From NCBI RefSeq assembly GCF_006345805.1, contig NC_043005.1:108810001-108874000 (forward strand): a stretch of 64,000 nucleotides of DNA. Reading direction: 5' to 3'. This document shows positions 1 through 29,880 of the stretch, piece by piece. How positions within the stretch are numbered: the first letter of the stretch is position 1; each line of letters opens with the position of its first letter. The stretch comes from Octopus sinensis (taxonomy: Eukaryota). The notes beneath the pieces are model-generated. The model saw only the letters and a list, made by a program, of their open reading frames with translations, did no database searches and had not been told where the DNA came from. Both the position numbers and the translations under genes were made by a program.

Positions 1-225
1 CTTGAGCAGAACTATGCTCCAGATAGTTTAACCATAGCAAACTCCAGATTTTTGTTCCAGATAGTTTAACCATAGCAAACTCCAGATCTATGTTCCTGAT
101 AGTTTAACCATAGCAAACTCCAGATCTATGTTTCAGATAGTTTAACCATAGCAAACTCCAGATCTATGTTCCAGATAGTTTAACCATAGAAAACTCCAGA
201 TCTATGTTCCAGATTTTTGAACCAC
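1..225. repeat. 38-bp minisatellite, about 5.5 copies (may extend left of the window)
   Basis: Unit CCAGATAGTTTAACCATAGCAAACTCCAGATCTATGTT recurs at 19, 57, 95, 133, 171, 209 (period 38) with few substitutions. Confidence 0.95.
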
Positions 226-3608: not shown

Positions 3609-4550
3609 TATATTAAGAAAAAAATTTTTGAGATAATTAATAATAATTCATTCAGTAATGCAGAGTTTTTAAAAATTAAAATAATCATGTATGTTGATGT
3701 CTGTTGTAACCCTTTCTACAAACCACACCACACACACACAAGCGCACATACATACATGTAAACATATACAGACATATATCTAAAAATGCAAGATGAAGCA
3801 TATCATGAGAGGACAGACATCGAGATAGGTCAAATAGTTTTTCATCGACCAAGCAAAACAGAACCATTTACTAGTGATAGATACATTTGGTTGTCATTTG
3901 TAGGTTGTCTTTTTTTTTAAATAAACCATCTTTCTTCAATAAATTTTAAAAGGAAATGTTTGCTACATATATAATGGCATTTATTGATTAAGTAAACGCT
4001 GATATAAAGGATACAATAAATGCTTTCTTTTTATAATTTTACAAATATGTTTCTTTGTGTATTTTCATTGATATAAACTGGAGCCATACTAGCATTCAGT
4101 GGTCATTGAAATGGTTCCTTGGTAAATGATCCATCTATCTTAATCACACTAAGTCGTATATATACTGTTTGTTTTCTATCAAATCCATCCTCAGATTTGA
4201 TATGCATAATAATTATGTGTATCACAGACCCTAAACCTGAAATATGGACATAGGGAATAGTTGATCACATCTATACCAGTTCAATACTGGTATTTTATTT
4301 CATCTAACCCAATGGGATAATATTAGAGTTGAATGAACTTCATGTGATTTGAACTCAGAAAATGAAGAGCTGAAATAAGACCTGCAAGGTATTTTTATCT
4401 AATGCCCTGACAATTCTACCAGCTAATTGCTTCAATAATAATCTCTAATTTGGGCCAACAGTTTTGTCAGTGAGAAGGTTAGTCAGTTACAGCAGCAAGT
4501 ACAATATTTCATTGATTACAAAAAAGAGTGAAAGGCAAAGCTGATCTTAA

Positions 4551-4771
4551 CCCTCTCGATACCAACCCACCTGAAACCACCTCCGGTTCTGAGTACAAAT
4601 ATCTTGTTTTCAAAAGGTCTGAATTAAAATCTTTCATTAAACCTTAGTCACAATTTATGTTCATAACACTAGCTTAATGATAACTAAGTTATTTTACTAA
4701 ATTCTTTGTTATATTTAAAATTAATTGAAAGAAACACGGGGCGTCTCAACAGAAATATGGCAACAAAAGGG
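4551..4771. mobile_element. piggyBac-like MITE
   Basis: TTAA at 4547-4550 and 4772-4775; CCCT...AGGG termini with an imperfect TIR; homologous to 23536-23760 and 44925-45145; sits inside a decayed family B SINE. Confidence 0.85.
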
Positions 4772-5565
4772 TTAATGTGATTTGAACTCAGAATGCTAAA
4801 GCAAGAGCACATATTACAAGGCATTTTGTCCAACACTAAGCTAATTCTTCCAACCTGTCACCATAATAATTAAAACATGCTTTAATAATTATATTCTGAT
4901 AATACTTTATAATACAGTGTCTTTTTTTTGGTAGCTCAAAATAACTCTGTGTAGAGCAACTTTACCAATTAAATACTTATTCAGGAGATTATTTTTGATG
5001 TGTATCTCATTGCCAGTATATTTCGCCTGCAATCTATTCTGTTTCTTATAATTCAATTTGTAATTCTCTCTTCCAGTCATTAAATAAAACTAATTGAATC
5101 TAGATTCTCTCATTTGGTATACGACTCTTACAAGAATTACCATCCAGATAGACATCATCATCATCATCATAATCTAACAATTTTTGAATCTACTGATATG
5201 TCTATCTAAACCCTTAAAATGTTGTTTTAAGATGAATTTTTTTTTCTTGTTTTATTCCTTTGAGTGTCTCATTGAGTCTCTGTTTTCTTTAGTTTTGACC
5301 TGAACGAACATGTTATTTTTACATGCAAATATATTCTGACCTCTGATGACACAAAGTACACTGAAACAGTTTATGTACTCTATAAGACCAGTAAATAACT
5401 TGCAAAGAATAATGAACATTATATATAAGTACGTGAAGAAATATGTGTGTATGAAGGTGAACATATATGCCTATATGTGTATATCTATCTATCTATCTAA
5501 CTCTCTTTCTCTCCCTCTCTCTCTCTCTCTCTCTCTAGATATATATATACATACACACACAATAC

Positions 5566-20020: not shown

Positions 20021-22708
<2,688 letters not shown>

Positions 22709-22721
22709 TACATATATATAC

Positions 22722-22752
<31 letters not shown>

Positions 22753-22772
22753 ATATATACATACACACACAC

Positions 22773-22811
<39 letters not shown>

Positions 22812-23406
22812 CATATATATTTATACAAATATATACACACCCATGTTTATGTATGTATATAACAACATGAAAGAATAACAAAAACAGCTATGAGAGCTGC
22901 AACAAGAAAGACTTGTATTTTCAAAAATTCTGACAAAGGTATTTTTGTTAAGCAAGTGTTGCATCTTTTGTTGATGGTAAAATTGAATTTCTTCATACAT
23001 TAAGGCTGGATTTTGGCTCTTTCTTTACCAAAACCTACTCAACCTTTTCTATTTTGAAGTAAAAGTAAAAAAAAAAAAATGTCCATAATAATAAATTATA
23101 TAGATTAATCAAAATCAGGATGAATAACAAATAGAAAAAATAAATAAGAAAAATTTAATGAAGAATGATGATGATGATGATGATGATGATGACAATGCTA
23201 ACAATGCAAGGATGATGATAAACATTATTTTTAACACAAAATCATGAGAATCAGACTGCAAACAACATATTAACTATATTCTTTTAAAAATTATTAATAT
23301 TAATACTTTTATCATCGTCCTCATTGTCGTCACCATCATCATCATCATCATCATTATCATCATCATCATCATCATCATCATCGTCATCATCATTCTCATC
23401 ATTAGT

Positions 23407-23850
23407 TAGGTGGTGAGCTGGTAGGATCGTTAGGCACTATGGACAAAATGCATGGTGGTATTTCATTTATTTCTATATTCTAAGTTCAAATTCGACCAAG
23501 GGTGACTTTGCATTTCATTCTTTTGGGGTCATTAACCCTTTTTATTACCAACCCGGCTGAAACCAGCTCTGGCTCTATAATACAAGTGTTTTGTTTTCAT
23601 AAGTTTTGAATTAAAATCTTCCGCCAAACCTTAGTCACAATTCATGTTCCTAACACTAGCTGAATGATAACTAAGTTATTTTACTAAACTCTTCGTTATT
23701 TCTCTGTTGTTAATTAAAAGAAACACAGAGCCTCTCGAAATAAATACAGTAAGAAAAGGGTTGAAATAAGTGGCAGTCAAATACTAAAGTCAAAGTAGTT
23801 AACTAGCCCTGCCCCATAAAATTTCAGGCTTTGTATCTATAGAAGATTGG
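23407..23850 (+). mobile_element. Decayed SINE family B interrupted by a piggyBac-like MITE
   Basis: GTGGTGAGCTGGTAGGATCGTTAG head and GACTTTGCATTTCATTC CORE-like segment; resumes after 23760 and ends at AAAATTTCAGGCTTTGTATCTATAGAAG + (TTA)n. Confidence 0.75.
23536..23760. mobile_element. piggyBac-like MITE
   Basis: TTAA-CCCT...AGGG-TTGA; homologous to 4551-4771. Confidence 0.85.
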
Positions 23851-24564
23851 GTTATTATTATTCTTTTAACTCAAGTTATTATTATTATTATTCTTTTAAC
23901 TCAAGTTATTATTATTATTATTCTTTTAACTCAAGTTATTATTATTATTATTCTTTTAACTCAAGTTATTATTATTATTATTCTTTTAACTCAAGTTATT
24001 ATTATTATTATTCTTTTAACTCAAGTTATTATTATTATTATTCTTTTAACTCAAGTTATTATTATTATTATTCTTTTAACTCAAGTTATTATTATTATTA
24101 TTCTTTTAACTCAAGTTATATTATTATTATTCTTTTAACTCAAGTTATTAATATTATTATTCTTTTAACTCAAGTTATTATTATTATTATTCTTTTAACT
24201 CAAGTTATTATTATTATTATTCTTTTAACTCAAGTTATTATTATTATTATTCTTTTAACTCAAGTTATTATTATTATTATTCTTTTAACTCAAGTTATTA
24301 TTATTATTATTCTTTTAACTCAAGTTATTATTATTATTATTCTTTTAACTCAAGTTATTATTATTATTATTCTTTTAACTCAAGTTATTATTATTATTAT
24401 TCTTTTAACTCAAGTTATTATTATTATTATTCTTTTAACTCAAGTTATTATTATTATTATTCTTTTAACTCAAGTTATTATTATTATTATTCTTTTAACT
24501 CAAGTTATTATTATTATTATTCTTTTAACTCAAGTTATTATTATTATTATTCTTTTAACTCAAG
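23851..24564. repeat. 30-bp minisatellite, 24 copies
   Basis: Unit TTATTATTATTATTATTCTTTTAACTCAAG. First copy short, one 29-bp copy (24116-24144), one substitution (24151); otherwise homogeneous. Confidence 0.97.
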
Positions 24565-24656
24565 ACTCCTGGAGTCTTGTATAAGTAGTGGGCCTGTTAC
24601 TTAAAGCCTATGGTACCATGCTATTCATTCTCTTCCACTATCTAATAGTTTCTTGA

Positions 24657-24891
24657 GTAAGGCAGCGAGCTGTCAGAATCGTTAGCACGCCGGGCGAAGT
24701 GCCTAGCGGTAATTTGTCTGCTGTTACGCTCTGAGTTCAAATTCCGCCAAGGTCAACTTTGCCTTTCATCCTTTCGGGGTCGATAAATTAAGTACCCGTT
24801 ATACACTGGCGTCGATGTAATCGTCTTAATCCCTTTGTCTGTCCTTGTTTGTCCCATCTGTGTTTAGCCCCTTGTGAGTAATAAAGAAATA
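24657..24891 (+). mobile_element. SINE family B (full length)
   Basis: GGCAGCGAGCTGTCAGAATCGTTAGC head, GTTCAAATTCC B-box-like; TSD AGTTTCTTGA at 24647-24656 and 24892-24901. Confidence 0.92.
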
Positions 24892-25349
24892 AGTTTCTTG
24901 ATGATTCTGGCTGTGCCAAGGGGGAAAATTTTTGCAACAGCTCTCCTGGGCACTCTGTTCCCATTTCTTTTATATTTCTCTCAATAACTTTTGAATGCTG
25001 TCCCCACAACCTCAACAATAATTGGCACTGTCTTCACCTTTTTTCATTTTCTATAGTTCAGCTATCATGTATTCAAGAGGTTTGTATATGTCCTTCTTAA
25101 CTATTTGTGGGTCAACAGAGCACACAACAGCATTTATAGGGGAAGATATAGTTCATCTTGTCCACCACCTCTTGGTCTGGTTTCTTGTGTTCAAGCACCT
25201 GATCCATTTGGATTGGAATTTCCCACAGGATTTTGAAAGTCTCTGACTCAGTCACTCTCTGTGGTCTGTGTTTGTATCTCGGATTGCCTCTCACTAACCC
25301 ACACTTTCCATACAGTTTTCAATGTGGCACTTTTGCTACCTCCTCCTCC

Positions 25350-25540
25350 TCCTCATCATCATCATCATTTAACGTCTGTTTTCCATGCTAGCATGGGTTG
25401 GACGGTTCGACCGGGGTCTGTGAATCCAGGAGGCTGCACCAGGCTCCAGTCTGATTTGTCAGTGTTTCTACAGTTGGATGCCCTTCCTAATACCAATCAC
25501 TCCGCGAGTGTAGTGGGTACTTTTTACGTGCCACCTGTGG
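25350..25540 (-). mobile_element. SINE family C 3' part
   Basis: CATCATTTAACGTCTGTTTTCCATGCTAGCATGGGTTGGACGG...; splits the Dong/R4-like reading frame. Confidence 0.88.
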
Positions 25541-25849
25541 TCAAAATTTATATTGATTTGAAGCAAGTTGATGGTATTCATTCACAATATGGGCAACAGT
25601 TTCTCAAATCCATTACAAATTTGACACAATTTCTAAGGTTGACCCTCTGATTTGTGACCAAAGTTTGGCTTTGCACTGCAAGTATAATGCTCTCAGTCTC
25701 CTTTTTAAATGTTCAGTTCTTTAACCAGTTCCATCACTTGTTCTCCAGCAACTTCAGCTGTGGCCAGATGGAATTGGTTGTGTTGCCCCTTGCTGAAAAT
25801 TTCTTTTGATACTTCTTTCCTTTTTCCTGCTTTTTCCAATCATCATCAC

Positions 25850-26000
25850 TATCACCACTGCCGCCGCCGCCACTGCCACCACCTTCGTCGTCGTCGTCGT
25901 CATCATCATCGTCATCATCATCGTCATCATCATCATCATCATCATCATCACCACCACCACCACTACCACCACCACCACCACCACCACCACCACCACCACC

Positions 26001-26059
<59 letters not shown>

Positions 26060-26062
26060 GAA
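25850..26062. repeat. (CGT)n/(CAT)n/(CAC)n trinucleotide array
   Basis: Directly visible; source of the poly-His/Asp/Gly ORFs. Confidence 0.95.
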
Positions 26063-26699
26063 CATTATCACTATCACACTGTGGTAAGGAAATATTTGCT
26101 TTTTTGTTTTTGCTTTTGTCTTTTGGTCTGTAAATGTTATTTCCTACTTGCTTCTGTCTAGAAATCAAGGGAAATGACGATTTTCCCCTCCAAACTTTGC
26201 TTTTGTGACCTGTATCGTTTCTAGTCGTCTCAGCTCTCACCAACTGACTATAAAATATACAAAGCTGACAGGGTCCAAGAGTAGCATCACTCCTCTGAAT
26301 GTTCTTTGCTATAATCCTTATATTGCAGCATCCCACAAGGCAACATGATGACCACAGAAAACATGGAAGTGTTTTCCTAATCATTAAAACAATGTGTATC
26401 CTTGGCCTTTAAGCTCCTACATGACCTGCCCTGATCAGCAAAACAAAAAAAATATGCTTTCATATATCACTTAGTCACCAAGTTAGGAGAAATATGGTAC
26501 AGTCTTACAAAAACAGTGATATGGTCATTTATAAAAGAAATGAGCGTGATAGATGACTTAGTCTAGGAACAGTCAATAGGCTAAGACAAGCAAACAAAGT
26601 TGTCCAAGCAAGAGACTCAGAGCACAATTCTTCAGGCGAGGAAAATGTAATGATTCTCTCATCCTCAAATATTGACATGAACAAGGTAAAAATAGGAAA

Positions 26700-27250
26700 C
26701 CACAAAGCTGGAATCAAAATCAGTTCTATTTTCAGGCCCTTGACCAAGATCAACACAAAATATCCGCAAAATGGATTTATGCAAAGAAAATGTTAAATGA
26801 CAAACAAATTTGTAAAGCAGAACTTGTAGTAAGAGACTTTCAAAACAGAGATGCTTGTAATACCAGAAGTGACCCTTCCACATGTTTATAAAAGGGGTTA
26901 CGTATAGCATTAACAATTATGGCATCTCAGAGTTGGCTATACAAATCAATGGATATTAAAACTGCCTTCTTACAAAGAAAGCCATGATACAGACTAGTTT
27001 ACCCAGACATTCTAGGTAAACTAATTTGGCCAATGTACCTCCAGATTATATATGGAAATTTTCAAAATGTGAATATGGCTTGACTGATACTTCAAGGTCC
27101 TGGCATCTAACAATCAGAGAGGAATTAATTGAGTTGGGGTCAGTAGCATCAAAATACGATCTGGCAATATTTACATGATGCTGTAGAAACAAACTGCATG
27201 GTAGTGTTGCTACATGTGTGGATGACTTCTGCTTTCCAGATTCAATGACC
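26700..27250 (+). mobile_element. Ty1/copia reverse transcriptase relic
   Basis: DQDQHKISAKWIYAKK..CKAELVVRDFQ..RSDPSTC..LRIALTIMASQSWLYKSMDIKTAFLQ; after a frameshift IWKFSKCEYGLTDTSRSWHL..LIELG..SKYDLAIF..LHGSVATCVDDF. Matches the copia KARLVARGF, DIKTAFL, LxKxxYGL and VDD motifs. Upstream 26160-26700 may be decayed integrase or linker. No LTRs seen. Confidence 0.88.
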
Positions 27251-29239: not shown

Positions 29240-29880
29240 CCAAAGGTGCTCGTTATAATTTCCTATTCCTTCAGTGGGGATCTATATAGCATTCACAAGT
29301 ACTTTCAAGATGTTATGGCTATAGTAGGGAACTACAAAAGAACTGAGTGTTTTTTTTTTTTTTCCAGCATACACCTGTAATTCAAAATGACCAGAAATTG
29401 TAAGCCATGATACTGAAACTATGGAAAATTGCCCTAACTTGACAACCAGTGTATACAATTTTCGGCTTACTGAGTTACTAAATAATTCAAAAGAATTGCT
29501 AATTTTTACAGTCTCAGATTCACATGTTTATGTAATGGAATTTCAGAACCATGGACTTCCTTATTGCCACATGTTAATTCTTCTACAAGATGAGAATAAC
29601 ATGAGAACTCAAGTTGATATTGACAGCAGAAATTACAGGTGAAAACAAAAACATGTAATTTCAGAAAATTGTGAAAAAAATTGTGATACAGAGACCTCAG
29701 CTCTTTGCTTTATAATTGGATTATATCAAAAGAAATTCCCCGAAAGCTTCCAGGAAAAAAACCCATTTTAAATATAAGCATTTAATCTGAATACTGTCAC
29801 TACAGTAATGAAACTGAAGTACATGTTGAATACTATTTTATTGACAGTTGCTATGTGGTGCTGTATATCACAATTGTGTT
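29240..29880 (+). mobile_element. Helitron Rep (HUH) domain relic
   Basis: HKYFQDVMAIVGNYKRTE..YTCNSK*PEI..CPNLTTSVYNFRLTELL..YVMEFQNHGLPYCHMLILL..RTQVDID; later YQKKFPESF and IDSCYVVLY. Parallels the Helitron YQDAMA, FTCNPKWPEI and EFQKRGLPHAH motifs. Frameshifted, HUH motif degraded. Confidence 0.85.

What the first reader, a model, noticed from the sequence alone, without database searches (positions are those of the whole stretch)
23851..24627. A minisatellite made of the reiterated 3' end of a Dong/R4-like retroelement
Seen: on the minus strand the element ends ...GTARIIKKLLDSGRE* (TGA 24625-27), followed by a ~75-nt UTR finishing CTTGAGTTAAAAG-AATAATAATAATAATAA. The 24 array units are exactly this terminal segment (about 15 nt of unique sequence + about five AAT triplets), lying between the element body and the (TTA)n tail of a SINE. 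Known: Dong-type elements target (TAA)n repeats, and TPRT starts at the RNA 3' end. Inference: either the RT repeatedly re-copied the RNA terminus before elongating (telomerase-like reiteration or template jumping), or the junction expanded later. Caveat: the array is almost homogeneous (2 variants) while the body is heavily decayed, which favours late expansion or homogenisation.
Basis: partly seen in the sequence, partly recalled or inferred. Interest (0 to 1): 0.85.

Follow-up and report, generated by a model that had tools for sequence, protein, structure and literature searches.

The report
Minisatellite grown from a LINE tail
The last 13 bases and (TAA)5 tail of an old, broken Dong-like retrotransposon have been copied 24 times in tandem, most likely by recent DNA-level expansion and not by the element's reverse transcriptase, which makes it an ordinary transposon-derived minisatellite.

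Summary
Positions 23852-24564 hold 24 head-to-tail 30-nt units: CTTGAGTTAAAAG plus (AAT)5AA on the minus strand. Unit 1 is contiguous with a 60-nt 3' UTR that follows the natural stop codon (24625-27) of a 5'-truncated, decayed LINE encoding a restriction-like endonuclease (RLE).

- **Relatives are Dong-type.** Relatives with the same C-terminal domain carry (TAA)n tails and sit inside (TAA)n tracts. The clade itself could not be tested, because this copy has no RT domain.
- **The 13-mer is native.** A paralogous copy from a short-read assembly (L014) has a homologous UTR that ends in the same motif, once only. So the 13-mer is the element's own terminus, and reiteration is not a family rule.
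- **No reiteration elsewhere.** The four 3' ends checked in related Dong-like families also show plain (AAT)n tails.
- **The array is much younger than the element.** The array shows 1 substitution and 1 indel in 713 nt. The ORF has at least 5 stops and 4 frameshifts, plus two later SINE insertions that are themselves 5-8% diverged.

The present array therefore reflects late slippage or unequal exchange. A reverse-transcriptase event cannot be excluded for the first duplication. One candidate is an ultra-short re-insertion into the element's own (TAA)n tail, since such stacking is common in relatives. Interest is low to moderate.

The parts
23852..24564 (-). Minisatellite: 24 head-to-tail units of CTTGAGTTAAAAG+(AAT)5AA (30 nt, 87% A+T). 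21 units are identical, units 14 and 15 each carry a single change, and the last unit is shortened to (AAT)3AA.
24565..24624 (-). Unique 60-nt 3' UTR of the LINE, directly contiguous with unit 1. Homologous (about 72%) to the 3' UTR of the paralogous copy L014.
24561..24579 (-). Perfect hairpin/palindrome CAAGACTC-CAG-GAGTCTTG. Its last four bases (CTTG) are the first four bases of unit 1. The CCAGGAG core is conserved in L014.
   Evidence: the local stem is real; the whole-UTR fold is not better than shuffles, z = -0.96
24625..24627 (-). Natural stop codon (TGA) of the LINE ORF. The tail ...LGTARIIKKLLDSGRE* aligns with the C-termini of intact relatives (...LLGTAKIVRKFLGV*, ...LLGTAGILRKVL*, L014 ...FGTARIIRKVIDN*).
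24628..25835 (-). 5'-truncated, decayed C-terminal part of an RLE-LINE ORF (CCHC zinc knuckle plus PD-(D/E)xK endonuclease region). At least 5 in-frame stops and 4 frameshifts over about 210 aligned codons, and catalytic motifs are eroded. It is interrupted by the two inserts listed below. There is no RT homology upstream of about 25835.
24657..24893 (+). Later SINE insertion into the ORF tail, with the 8-bp target duplication tttcttga at 24649-24656 and 24894-24901. It is 6.3% (5.3% non-CpG) diverged from the consensus of 6 window copies.
25341..25535 (-). Later insertion of a second SINE-like repeat with an (ATG)n(AGG)n tail. It is 7.7% diverged from the consensus of 7 window copies.
25840..26070 (.). 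Compound (GAT/GGT/GAC)n microsatellite (minus-strand reading) abutting the 5' truncation point. It is not (TAA)n.
23766..23851 (.). 86 nt flanking the distal end of the array. It has no other copy in the window and no significant similarity to the SINE 3' part.
23527..23765 (+). MITE with terminal inverted repeats AACCCTTTCGTTACC / GGTAACAAAAGGGTT, inserted next to or into a SINE-like head (23404-23530). Other copies lie at 44916-45150 and 4542-4776.

Best explanation
A Dong-like (RLE-type, (TAA)n-tailed) LINE inserted long ago as a 5'-truncated copy of about 0.74 kb and then decayed. Its native 3' end is a UTR hairpin, then CTTGAGTTAAAAG, then an (AAT)n tail. Much later, a 30-bp segment made of those last 13 UTR bases plus (AAT)5AA was duplicated. 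It was then amplified to 24 copies at the DNA level, by replication slippage and/or unequal sister-chromatid or homologue exchange within an 87% A+T tract. The result is an ordinary transposon-derived AT-rich minisatellite. Shown here: the anatomy, the LINE origin of the unit, the age gap between array and element, and the absence of reiteration in the other copies examined. Inferred: the DNA-level mechanism and the nature of the very first duplication.
For: 1. **The unit is the native LINE terminus.**
   - Unit 1 is contiguous with the UTR.
   - The UTR hairpin uses the first 4 nt of unit 1.
   - The paralogous copy L014 has a homologous UTR (about 72%) that ends in CTTGTGAGAAAGAG plus an A/T-rich (AAT) tail.
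2. **Age gap.**
   - The array has 1 substitution and 1 indel in 713 nt.
   - The ORF remnant has at least 5 stops and 4 frameshifts in about 210 codons.
   - It is only 66-70% identical to its paralogues.
   - Two SINEs that inserted into it afterwards are already 5.3% and 7.6% diverged at non-CpG sites.
   - At 5.3% divergence about 38 substitutions would be expected in the array. The Poisson probability of seeing 1 or fewer is about 1e-15 (my calculation).
3. **Tail length is copied faithfully.** All 22 internal (AAT) tracts have the same length apart from two point changes. DNA copying of a 30-bp block predicts this. Independent reverse-transcription initiations on a microsatellite do not: in relatives the tails vary from 50 to 194 nt.
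4. **Other copies lack reiteration.**
   - L014 has one terminal segment and then unrelated sequence, in a short-read contig that runs through the site.
   - In L008 copy 1 and L010-L012 the 15 nt of UTR nearest the tail occur once each, followed by plain (AAT)n.
5. **Precedent.** TE-derived minisatellites that expand by slippage or unequal exchange are well documented (review PMC6947457).
Against: - There is no short direct repeat flanking the unit that would explain the first duplication by classical slippage. The junctions GGAGT|CTTGAG and ATAA|CTTGAG share at most a 1-nt (C) microhomology.
- Single-stranded DNA folding of the units is no better than shuffles, so no structure-driven slippage is evident.
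- Only one same-family copy could be examined.
- Neither copy-number polymorphism nor the orthologous locus could be checked.
- An old RT-made array that has been kept homogeneous by concerted evolution would look the same today.
Confidence: 0.7

Rival explanations
1. RT-seeded, DNA-amplified. The first duplication arose when a (TAA)n-specific Dong-like element re-used the (TAA)n tail of this copy as a target and deposited an ultra-short 5'-truncated copy (13 nt of UTR plus tail), perhaps aborted at the UTR hairpin. Alternatively the RT switched template once during the original TPRT. Later slippage or unequal exchange amplified the two-unit seed.
For: - In relatives, 5'-truncated Dong-like copies and a ~55-nt (TAA)n-tailed mini-element are stacked head-to-tail inside the tails of earlier copies: L008 from 3826 and from 4696, L012 from 2190, L010 at 2264-2414.
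- The unit junction lacks the flanking microhomology expected for slippage.
- The unit boundary lies at the foot of a perfect hairpin.
- Dong-R4 LINEs are reported as recently active in Octopus vulgaris (PMC13282606).
Against: - The stacked copies seen in relatives are 55-750 nt long, not 13 nt, and they have variable tails.
- The unit starts 4 nt inside the stem, not at its base.
- Nothing in this single locus distinguishes this seed from a non-homologous DNA duplication.
- It explains at most one or two of the 24 units.
Confidence: 0.17
2. The whole array was made during the original TPRT by telomerase-like reiteration or repeated template jumping over the last 30 nt of the RNA, and it has since been kept homogeneous by concerted evolution.
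For: - Telomerase-like template slippage on a LINE 3' repeat is documented for eel UnaL2, on (UGUAA)n (PMC1636434).
- The unit is exactly the RNA terminus.
- The unit length is uniform.
Against: - The array is about 99.7% homogeneous inside a heavily decayed element that predates SINE insertions of 5-8% divergence. Without extra assumptions it cannot date from the insertion.
- The same-family copy L014 and four ends in related families show no reiteration.
- The known slippage involves 5-nt units at about n = 3, not 30 nt x 24.
- In my recollection (not checked here), end-to-end template jumping needs a template 5' end, which an internal position of the UTR does not provide.
Confidence: 0.06
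3. The LINE inserted next to, or into, a pre-existing 30-bp minisatellite whose (TAA)5 tracts attracted it. On this reading the units are not LINE-derived.
For: - Each unit contains a (TAA)5 tract, the preferred Dong target (PMC3812793, PMC7998251).
- The array is not found elsewhere in the window.
Against: - The 13-mer is homologous to the UTR end of the paralogous copy L014, which has no array.
- The UTR hairpin spans the UTR/unit-1 boundary.
- There is no (TAA)n between the UTR and the first 13-mer, as an insertion into a (TAA)5 tract would leave.
Confidence: 0.03
4. Assembly artefact. The copy number, or the array itself, is inflated by mis-assembly of a low-complexity AT-rich region.
For: - Perfectly repeated 30-mers are hard to assemble.
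- The single 1-nt deletion in an A/T run could be a read error.
Against: - Two distinct internal variant units and clean unique junctions on both sides are what a read-spanned array looks like.
- No reads are available to test this.
Confidence: 0.04

Closest known systems
Transposon-derived minisatellites (for example Alu-, B1- and MaLR-LTR-derived minisatellites; review PMC6947457)
   Same: A short internal or terminal piece of a retroposon becomes the unit of a head-to-tail array. The array grows by slippage or unequal exchange long after insertion, so it is much more homogeneous than the parent element.
   Different: Here the unit is the extreme 3' end plus the microsatellite tail of a (TAA)n-specific RLE LINE. 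No flanking 5-10 bp direct repeats are visible that could have started it.
Dong / R4-clade non-LTR retrotransposons ((TAA)n-specific; Bombyx Dong, DongAg, snail DongBg)
   Same: - An RT-zinc knuckle-RLE protein type.
- An (AAT)n 3' tail.
- Relatives with the same C-terminal domain sit between (AAT)n tracts (L010-L012).
- Dong-R4 LINEs are abundant in octopus genomes (PMC13282606, PMC8967140).
   Different: - This copy has no RT domain, so the clade (R4/Dong versus HERO and others) cannot be assigned.
- Its 5' flank is (GAT/GGT)n, not (TAA)n.
- One distant relative (L007) ends in poly(A).
Template slippage at the 3' (UGUAA)n repeat of eel LINE UnaL2 (PMC1636434)
   Same: Reiteration of the 3'-terminal RNA segment next to a 3' stem-loop, made by the element's own RT.
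   Different: UnaL2 units are 5 nt, about 3 copies, and are present on every copy as part of the mechanism. Here there are 30 nt x 24 at one old locus, absent from the other copies seen, and far younger than the insertion.
Expanded AT-rich minisatellites at rare human fragile sites (FRA16B ~33 bp, FRA10B ~42 bp units; recalled from general knowledge, not checked here)
   Same: Units of about 30-40 bp that are more than 80% A+T and expand to many near-identical copies by DNA-level instability.
   Different: Those expand to kilobases and are defined cytogenetically. No instability data exist for this locus.
Head-to-tail stacking of 5'-truncated Dong-like copies in (TAA)n tails (seen here in L008, L010, L012)
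   Same: The tail of a (TAA)n-specific element regenerates its own target, so terminal fragments pile up in tandem, separated by (TAA)n.
   Different: The stacked pieces are 55-750 nt with variable tails. The window's units are a uniform 13 nt + 17 nt, which points to block copying.

Membership tests
RLE-bearing non-LTR retrotransposon (R2/R4/NeSL/HERO/CRE group) | C-terminal CCHC zinc knuckle followed by a PD-(D/E)xK restriction-like endonuclease domain | tested here: met
   - The 68-aa piece finds 114 relatives (E from 1.5e-9) carrying ...KILWDF.IQTD..IEH.RPDIV..DK...IIDVAVP...EK..KY.DL.
- The frame-aware alignment covers the knuckle through to the C-terminus.
- The motifs are eroded in the window copy (IDVAVP>INAVVCS; knuckle cysteines partly lost).
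RLE-bearing non-LTR retrotransposon (R2/R4/NeSL/HERO/CRE group) | Reverse transcriptase domain upstream in the same ORF, and no APE endonuclease | tested here: inconclusive
   - The feature is absent from the window copy, which is 5'-truncated at about 25835.
- The intact relative P0098 has RVT_1 (E 9.8e-24) and no Exo_endo_phos hit. Its best solved-structure matches are R2 proteins (2e-31), compared with 5e-14 for L1 ORF2p.
Dong / R4 clade | Placement in the R4 clade by RT-domain phylogeny | not testable with these tools
Dong / R4 clade | (TAA)n at the 3' end of the element | tested here: met
   - Every unit, and the last junction, end in (AAT)n.
- Relatives with the same C-terminal domain end in (AAT)n of 50-194 nt.
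- The distant relative L007 ends in poly(A).
Dong / R4 clade | Insertion into (TAA)n, i.e. (TAA)n on both sides of the element | tested here: not met
   - The 5' flank of the window copy is (GAT/GGT/GAC)n.
- The 3' flank beyond the array is unique sequence.
- The feature is met in relatives L010 and L011, which have (AAT)n at about 1350-1480 just upstream of the truncated copies and again downstream; L012 has an upstream tract, but farther away at 767-1068.
- Old age and 5' truncation may have erased it here.
Transposon-derived minisatellite | Head-to-tail array of 10-100 bp units | tested here: met
   30 nt x 23.8 copies at 99% matches.
Transposon-derived minisatellite | The unit is a segment of a transposable element that is single-copy in other copies of the element | tested here: met
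   - Unit 1 is contiguous with the UTR.
- The L014 homologue has the motif once.
- This rests on only one same-family copy.
Transposon-derived minisatellite | The array is younger or more homogeneous than the parent element | tested here: met
   2 changes in 713 nt, compared with at least 9 disabling mutations in about 630 nt of ORF and 5-8% divergence of the later SINE inserts.
Transposon-derived minisatellite | Copy-number variation between individuals or species | not testable with these tools
   No reads, population data or sister genomes could be reached. Window ORFs are not on record in the contig index.
RT-made 3'-terminal reiteration (UnaL2-type slippage / telomerase-like) | Terminal repeats present on family copies generally, as a product of each retrotransposition | tested here: not met
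   L014 (same family) and four ends of related families (L008 copy 1, L010-L012) carry a single terminal segment. The sample is small.
RT-made 3'-terminal reiteration (UnaL2-type slippage / telomerase-like) | The repeats date from the insertion event | tested here: not met
   Array homogeneity is incompatible with the age of the element unless concerted evolution is invoked.

The most novel reading that the evidence does not exclude
Microsatellite-specific LINEs can seed minisatellites by self-targeting. Because a Dong-like element regenerates its own (TAA)n target at its tail, abortive TPRT stopped at the 3' hairpin deposits ultra-short 'terminal unit + tail' copies in that tail. These then serve as the seed for DNA-level expansion. 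This would be a general, RT-initiated route from a LINE terminus to an AT-rich minisatellite.
Probability: 0.15. Interest if true: 0.55.

Novelty: new member of a known kind. Interest (0 to 1): 0.25.

Why it matters
If the ordinary reading holds, this is one more example of a transposon terminus turning into a minisatellite. It is useful as a likely hypervariable marker and as a caution for repeat annotation. It adds an RLE/Dong-type LINE tail to the known sources, which are mostly SINEs and LTR elements.

It would matter more if a family-wide survey showed that short 'terminal unit + (TAA)n' copies are regularly deposited in the tails of Dong-like elements. That would link target-site regeneration by microsatellite-specific LINEs to the birth of minisatellites. 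It would also offer a natural system for studying abortive or reiterated TPRT by an R2-like enzyme.

Tried and rejected
- **Word-indexed protein searches.** The decayed 68-aa piece, the array's own + strand ORF ((YYYYYSFNSS)n/(IIIIILLTQV)n), and a three-sequence family profile found nothing beyond the inputs.
- **Exact look-ups of four window ORFs around the array.** None is on record. No orthologous or population contigs could therefore be fetched.
- **DNA pattern scans.** Scans for the unit (all three collections) and for the UTR/unit junction (metagenomes only) gave zero hits. This was expected, since none of these collections holds animal genomes.
- **Pfam on the short stop-free pieces.** No hits. 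The domain was identified through relatives instead.
- **RNA fold of the UTR.** The local 8-bp hairpin is real, but the overall fold is not better than shuffles (z = -0.96).
- **DNA folds of four units, either strand.** These are no better than shuffles. I therefore dropped a structure-driven slippage argument.
- **'SINE with a (TTA)n tail' on the distal side.** The 86-nt flank has no other copy in the window and scores below shuffles against the SINE consensus.
- **Loci L001-L006.** They stop before the 3' end or hold only a short LINE piece.
- **L007 (contig of intact relative P0098).** It ends in poly(A) and is too distant to inform on this family.
- **L009.** It is broken and has an unclear tail.
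- **L013.** This is an annotated multi-exon gene range and was not pursued.
- **Whole-window repeat finder.** It was swamped by TA-rich microsatellites.

Full report
**What is there**

Positions 23852-24564 hold a tandem array with period 30, 23.8 copies and 99% matches. It is the strongest non-microsatellite repeat in the 64-kb window. On the minus strand each unit reads CTTGAGTTAAAAG followed by (AAT)5AA.

The 21-mer core occurs 24 times, only in the array, against 0.01 expected by chance. The unit-by-unit listing shows:
- 21 units are identical.
- Unit 14 has one A>T change.
- Unit 15 has one 1-nt deletion.
- The last unit ends in (AAT)3AA immediately before the flank CCCAATC.

**The element it hangs on**

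Upstream on the minus strand lie a 60-nt unique UTR (24624-24565) and a TGA at 24625-27.

The ORF tail ...GTARIIKKLLDSGRE* reads through only if a later SINE insertion is skipped. That SINE lies at 24657-24893 and has the target duplication tttcttga. A second SINE-like insert sits at 25341-25535.

The longest stop-free piece (68 aa) finds 114 relatives in the 1.84-billion representative library. These relatives share the pattern C..C...ET..HI...C – KILWDF.IQTD – RPDIV..DK – IIDVAVP – EK..KY.DL – VIPVV.GALG – LLGTA.ILRK.L*. This is a zinc knuckle followed by a PD-(D/E)xK restriction-like endonuclease at the very C-terminus.

The intact relative P0098 (1105 aa) has RVT_1 upstream and no APE domain. 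Its best solved-structure matches are R2 proteins.

A frame-aware alignment of the window DNA to the last 265 residues of P0098 (about 210 codons aligned) shows 35% identity, 5 in-frame stops and 4 frameshifts, with eroded catalytic motifs. No RT homology exists upstream of about 25835.

So the 'body' is a 5'-truncated, heavily decayed fragment of about 0.74 kb from an RLE-type LINE.

**Is it Dong-like?**

The literature states that R4/Dong elements carry RT plus a REL-endonuclease. It also states that Dong targets (TAA)n in insects, molluscs and cnidarians (PMC3812793; PMC7998251). Dong-R4 LINEs are abundant and recently active in octopus genomes (PMC13282606, PMC8967140).

I fetched the genomic context of relatives with the same C-terminal domain.
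- In L008 and L010-L012 the stop codon is followed by a 60-110 nt UTR and a plain (AAT)n tail of 50-194 nt.
- The 5'-truncated copies in L010 and L011 have (AAT)n immediately upstream as well.

That is the Dong hallmark. The window copy shares the (AAT)n tail, but its 5' flank is (GAT/GGT)n. Clade assignment by RT phylogeny is impossible for this copy.

'Dong-like' is therefore reasonable as a description. It is not proven as membership.

**Is the unit really the element's end?**

Three observations say yes.
- Unit 1 is contiguous with the UTR.
- A perfect hairpin (CAAGACTC-CAG-GAGTCTTG, 24579-24561) uses the first four bases of unit 1.
- A paralogous copy supplies direct evidence. L014 comes from the same short-read sample as the closest protein hits and is 66% identical over 680 nt of ORF remnant. 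Its ORF ends ...FGTARIIRKVIDN*. Its homologous UTR (about 72% identical) contains the same CCAGGAG palindrome core and ends in CTTGTGAGAAAGAG plus an (AAT)-like tail.

This rules out the idea that the LINE merely landed beside an unrelated minisatellite.

**How the array arose**

It has a real precedent in UnaL2 template slippage on (UGUAA)n (PMC1636434). Four results speak against it for the array as it exists now.

1. *Age.* The two SINEs that inserted into the already-present LINE are 5.3% and 7.6% diverged at non-CpG sites from local consensuses. At the lower figure, about 38 substitutions would be expected in 713 nt, whereas 1 is seen. The Poisson probability is about 1e-15 (my calculation). 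Even 1% divergence would give about 7 substitutions.
2. *Uniform tails.* All internal (AAT) tracts are the same length. Tails made by independent TPRT events in relatives range from 50 to 194 nt.
3. *L014.* It carries the terminal motif once and continues into unrelated sequence. A short-read contig would have broken inside a homogeneous 30-mer array.
4. *Related families.* In the four ends tested in related Dong-like families (L008 copy 1, L010-L012), the 15 nt of UTR nearest the tail occur once per locus; the fifth end, L008 copy 2, was only read by eye.

It is thus met as far as the available data go.

The best explanation is a late, DNA-level amplification (slippage or unequal exchange) of a 30-bp block. 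This is the standard route for TE-derived minisatellites (PMC6947457).

**What remains open**

The first duplication is not explained by flanking direct repeats, since at most a 1-nt microhomology is present. Single-strand folding gives no hint either.

In relatives, the (TAA)n tails are repeatedly re-used as targets.
- A 5'-truncated second copy begins right after the tail of the first in L008 and L012.
- A ~55-nt (TAA)n-tailed mini-element sits in tails in both L008 and L010.

An ultra-short re-insertion, or a single template switch, could therefore have produced the two-unit seed. I rate this at about 0.15-0.2. A single locus cannot distinguish this from a non-homologous DNA duplication.

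Assembly error cannot be tested without reads. The two internal variant units and the clean junctions argue against it.

**Limits**

- No animal genome collection was available.
- All three word-indexed protein searches returned nothing useful.
- Exact look-ups of window ORFs failed.
- DNA pattern scans of the metagenome, prokaryote and viral collections were empty.
- The family survey therefore rests on one same-family paralogue plus five ends from related families.
- The source organism was not identified. The SINE and TA-rich repeat landscape suggest an octopod, but that is my recollection and not a test.

**Verdict**

The RT-reiteration reading is disfavoured. This is a new example of a known kind (a transposon-derived AT-rich minisatellite) and is of low to moderate interest.

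Noticed in passing
L008:3574-4900; L010:2032-2540; L012:2032-2640: In related Dong-like families from two long-read ENA assemblies, (TAA)n tails are re-used as targets. 5'-truncated copies are stacked head-to-tail. A ~55-nt (TAA)n-tailed mini-element (CTGARGAAGATTTTAMATCGAAACGT...ACAGTTGTGTT) occurs in both assemblies, once as an inverted pair in L010.
   Followed up: partly
window 23527-23765, 44916-45150, 4542-4776: A MITE family of about 238 bp with terminal inverted repeats AACCCTTTCGTTACC / GGTAACAAAAGGGTT. The three copies are 6-12% diverged from their consensus. One copy sits inside a SINE-like head next to the array.
   Followed up: partly
window 25341-25535 and six other sites (for example 60035-60229, 31374-31570, 45871-46062): A second SINE-like repeat family with a triplet (ATG)n/(AGG)n tail. 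One copy interrupts the LINE ORF. Long compound (GAT/GGT)n tracts elsewhere in the window (25840-26070, 23311-23402) may be grown tails of this family.
   Followed up: partly
window 20162-21484 and 21485-22807: A tandem segmental duplication of about 1.32 kb at about 90% identity, carrying the same series of microsatellites and 27-28-nt repeats in both halves.
   Followed up: partly
window 30400-30731 (+): A fragment of a second, different PD-(D/E)xK-type retroelement C-terminus (...RPDLVLW...LLELTVPWKENI...KRYGKL...AVGARGF...). It has no (TAA)n tail nearby.
   Followed up: no
window 63488-63925 (+): An RT-domain fragment matching residues 641-791 of the intact RLE-LINE relative P0098 (28% identity, E 2e-14) at the window edge. 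It may be another RLE-LINE copy running off the window.
   Followed up: no
window 7-214: A second true minisatellite: 38-nt unit x 5.5 copies at 93% matches (CAGATCTATGTTCCAGATAGTTTAACCATAGCAAACTC), cut by the window start.
   Followed up: no
window 27026-27178 (+) and 29421-29642 (+): Short ORFs that look, by eye only, like a copia-type RT fragment (...YGLTDTSRSWH...) and a Helitron/Pif1-type helicase fragment (...EFQNHGLPYCHMLILL...). Neither was run against Pfam.
   Followed up: no
L014:1395-1440 and L005:1229-1265: The sequence following the LINE tail in L014 (TTTATTGATCACGAGGGTCAAACACA...) looks by eye like a stretch in the unrelated contig L005 (not aligned; blastn between the two contigs, reported only the LINE piece). 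It may therefore be another dispersed repeat abutting or inserted into the tail.
   Followed up: no
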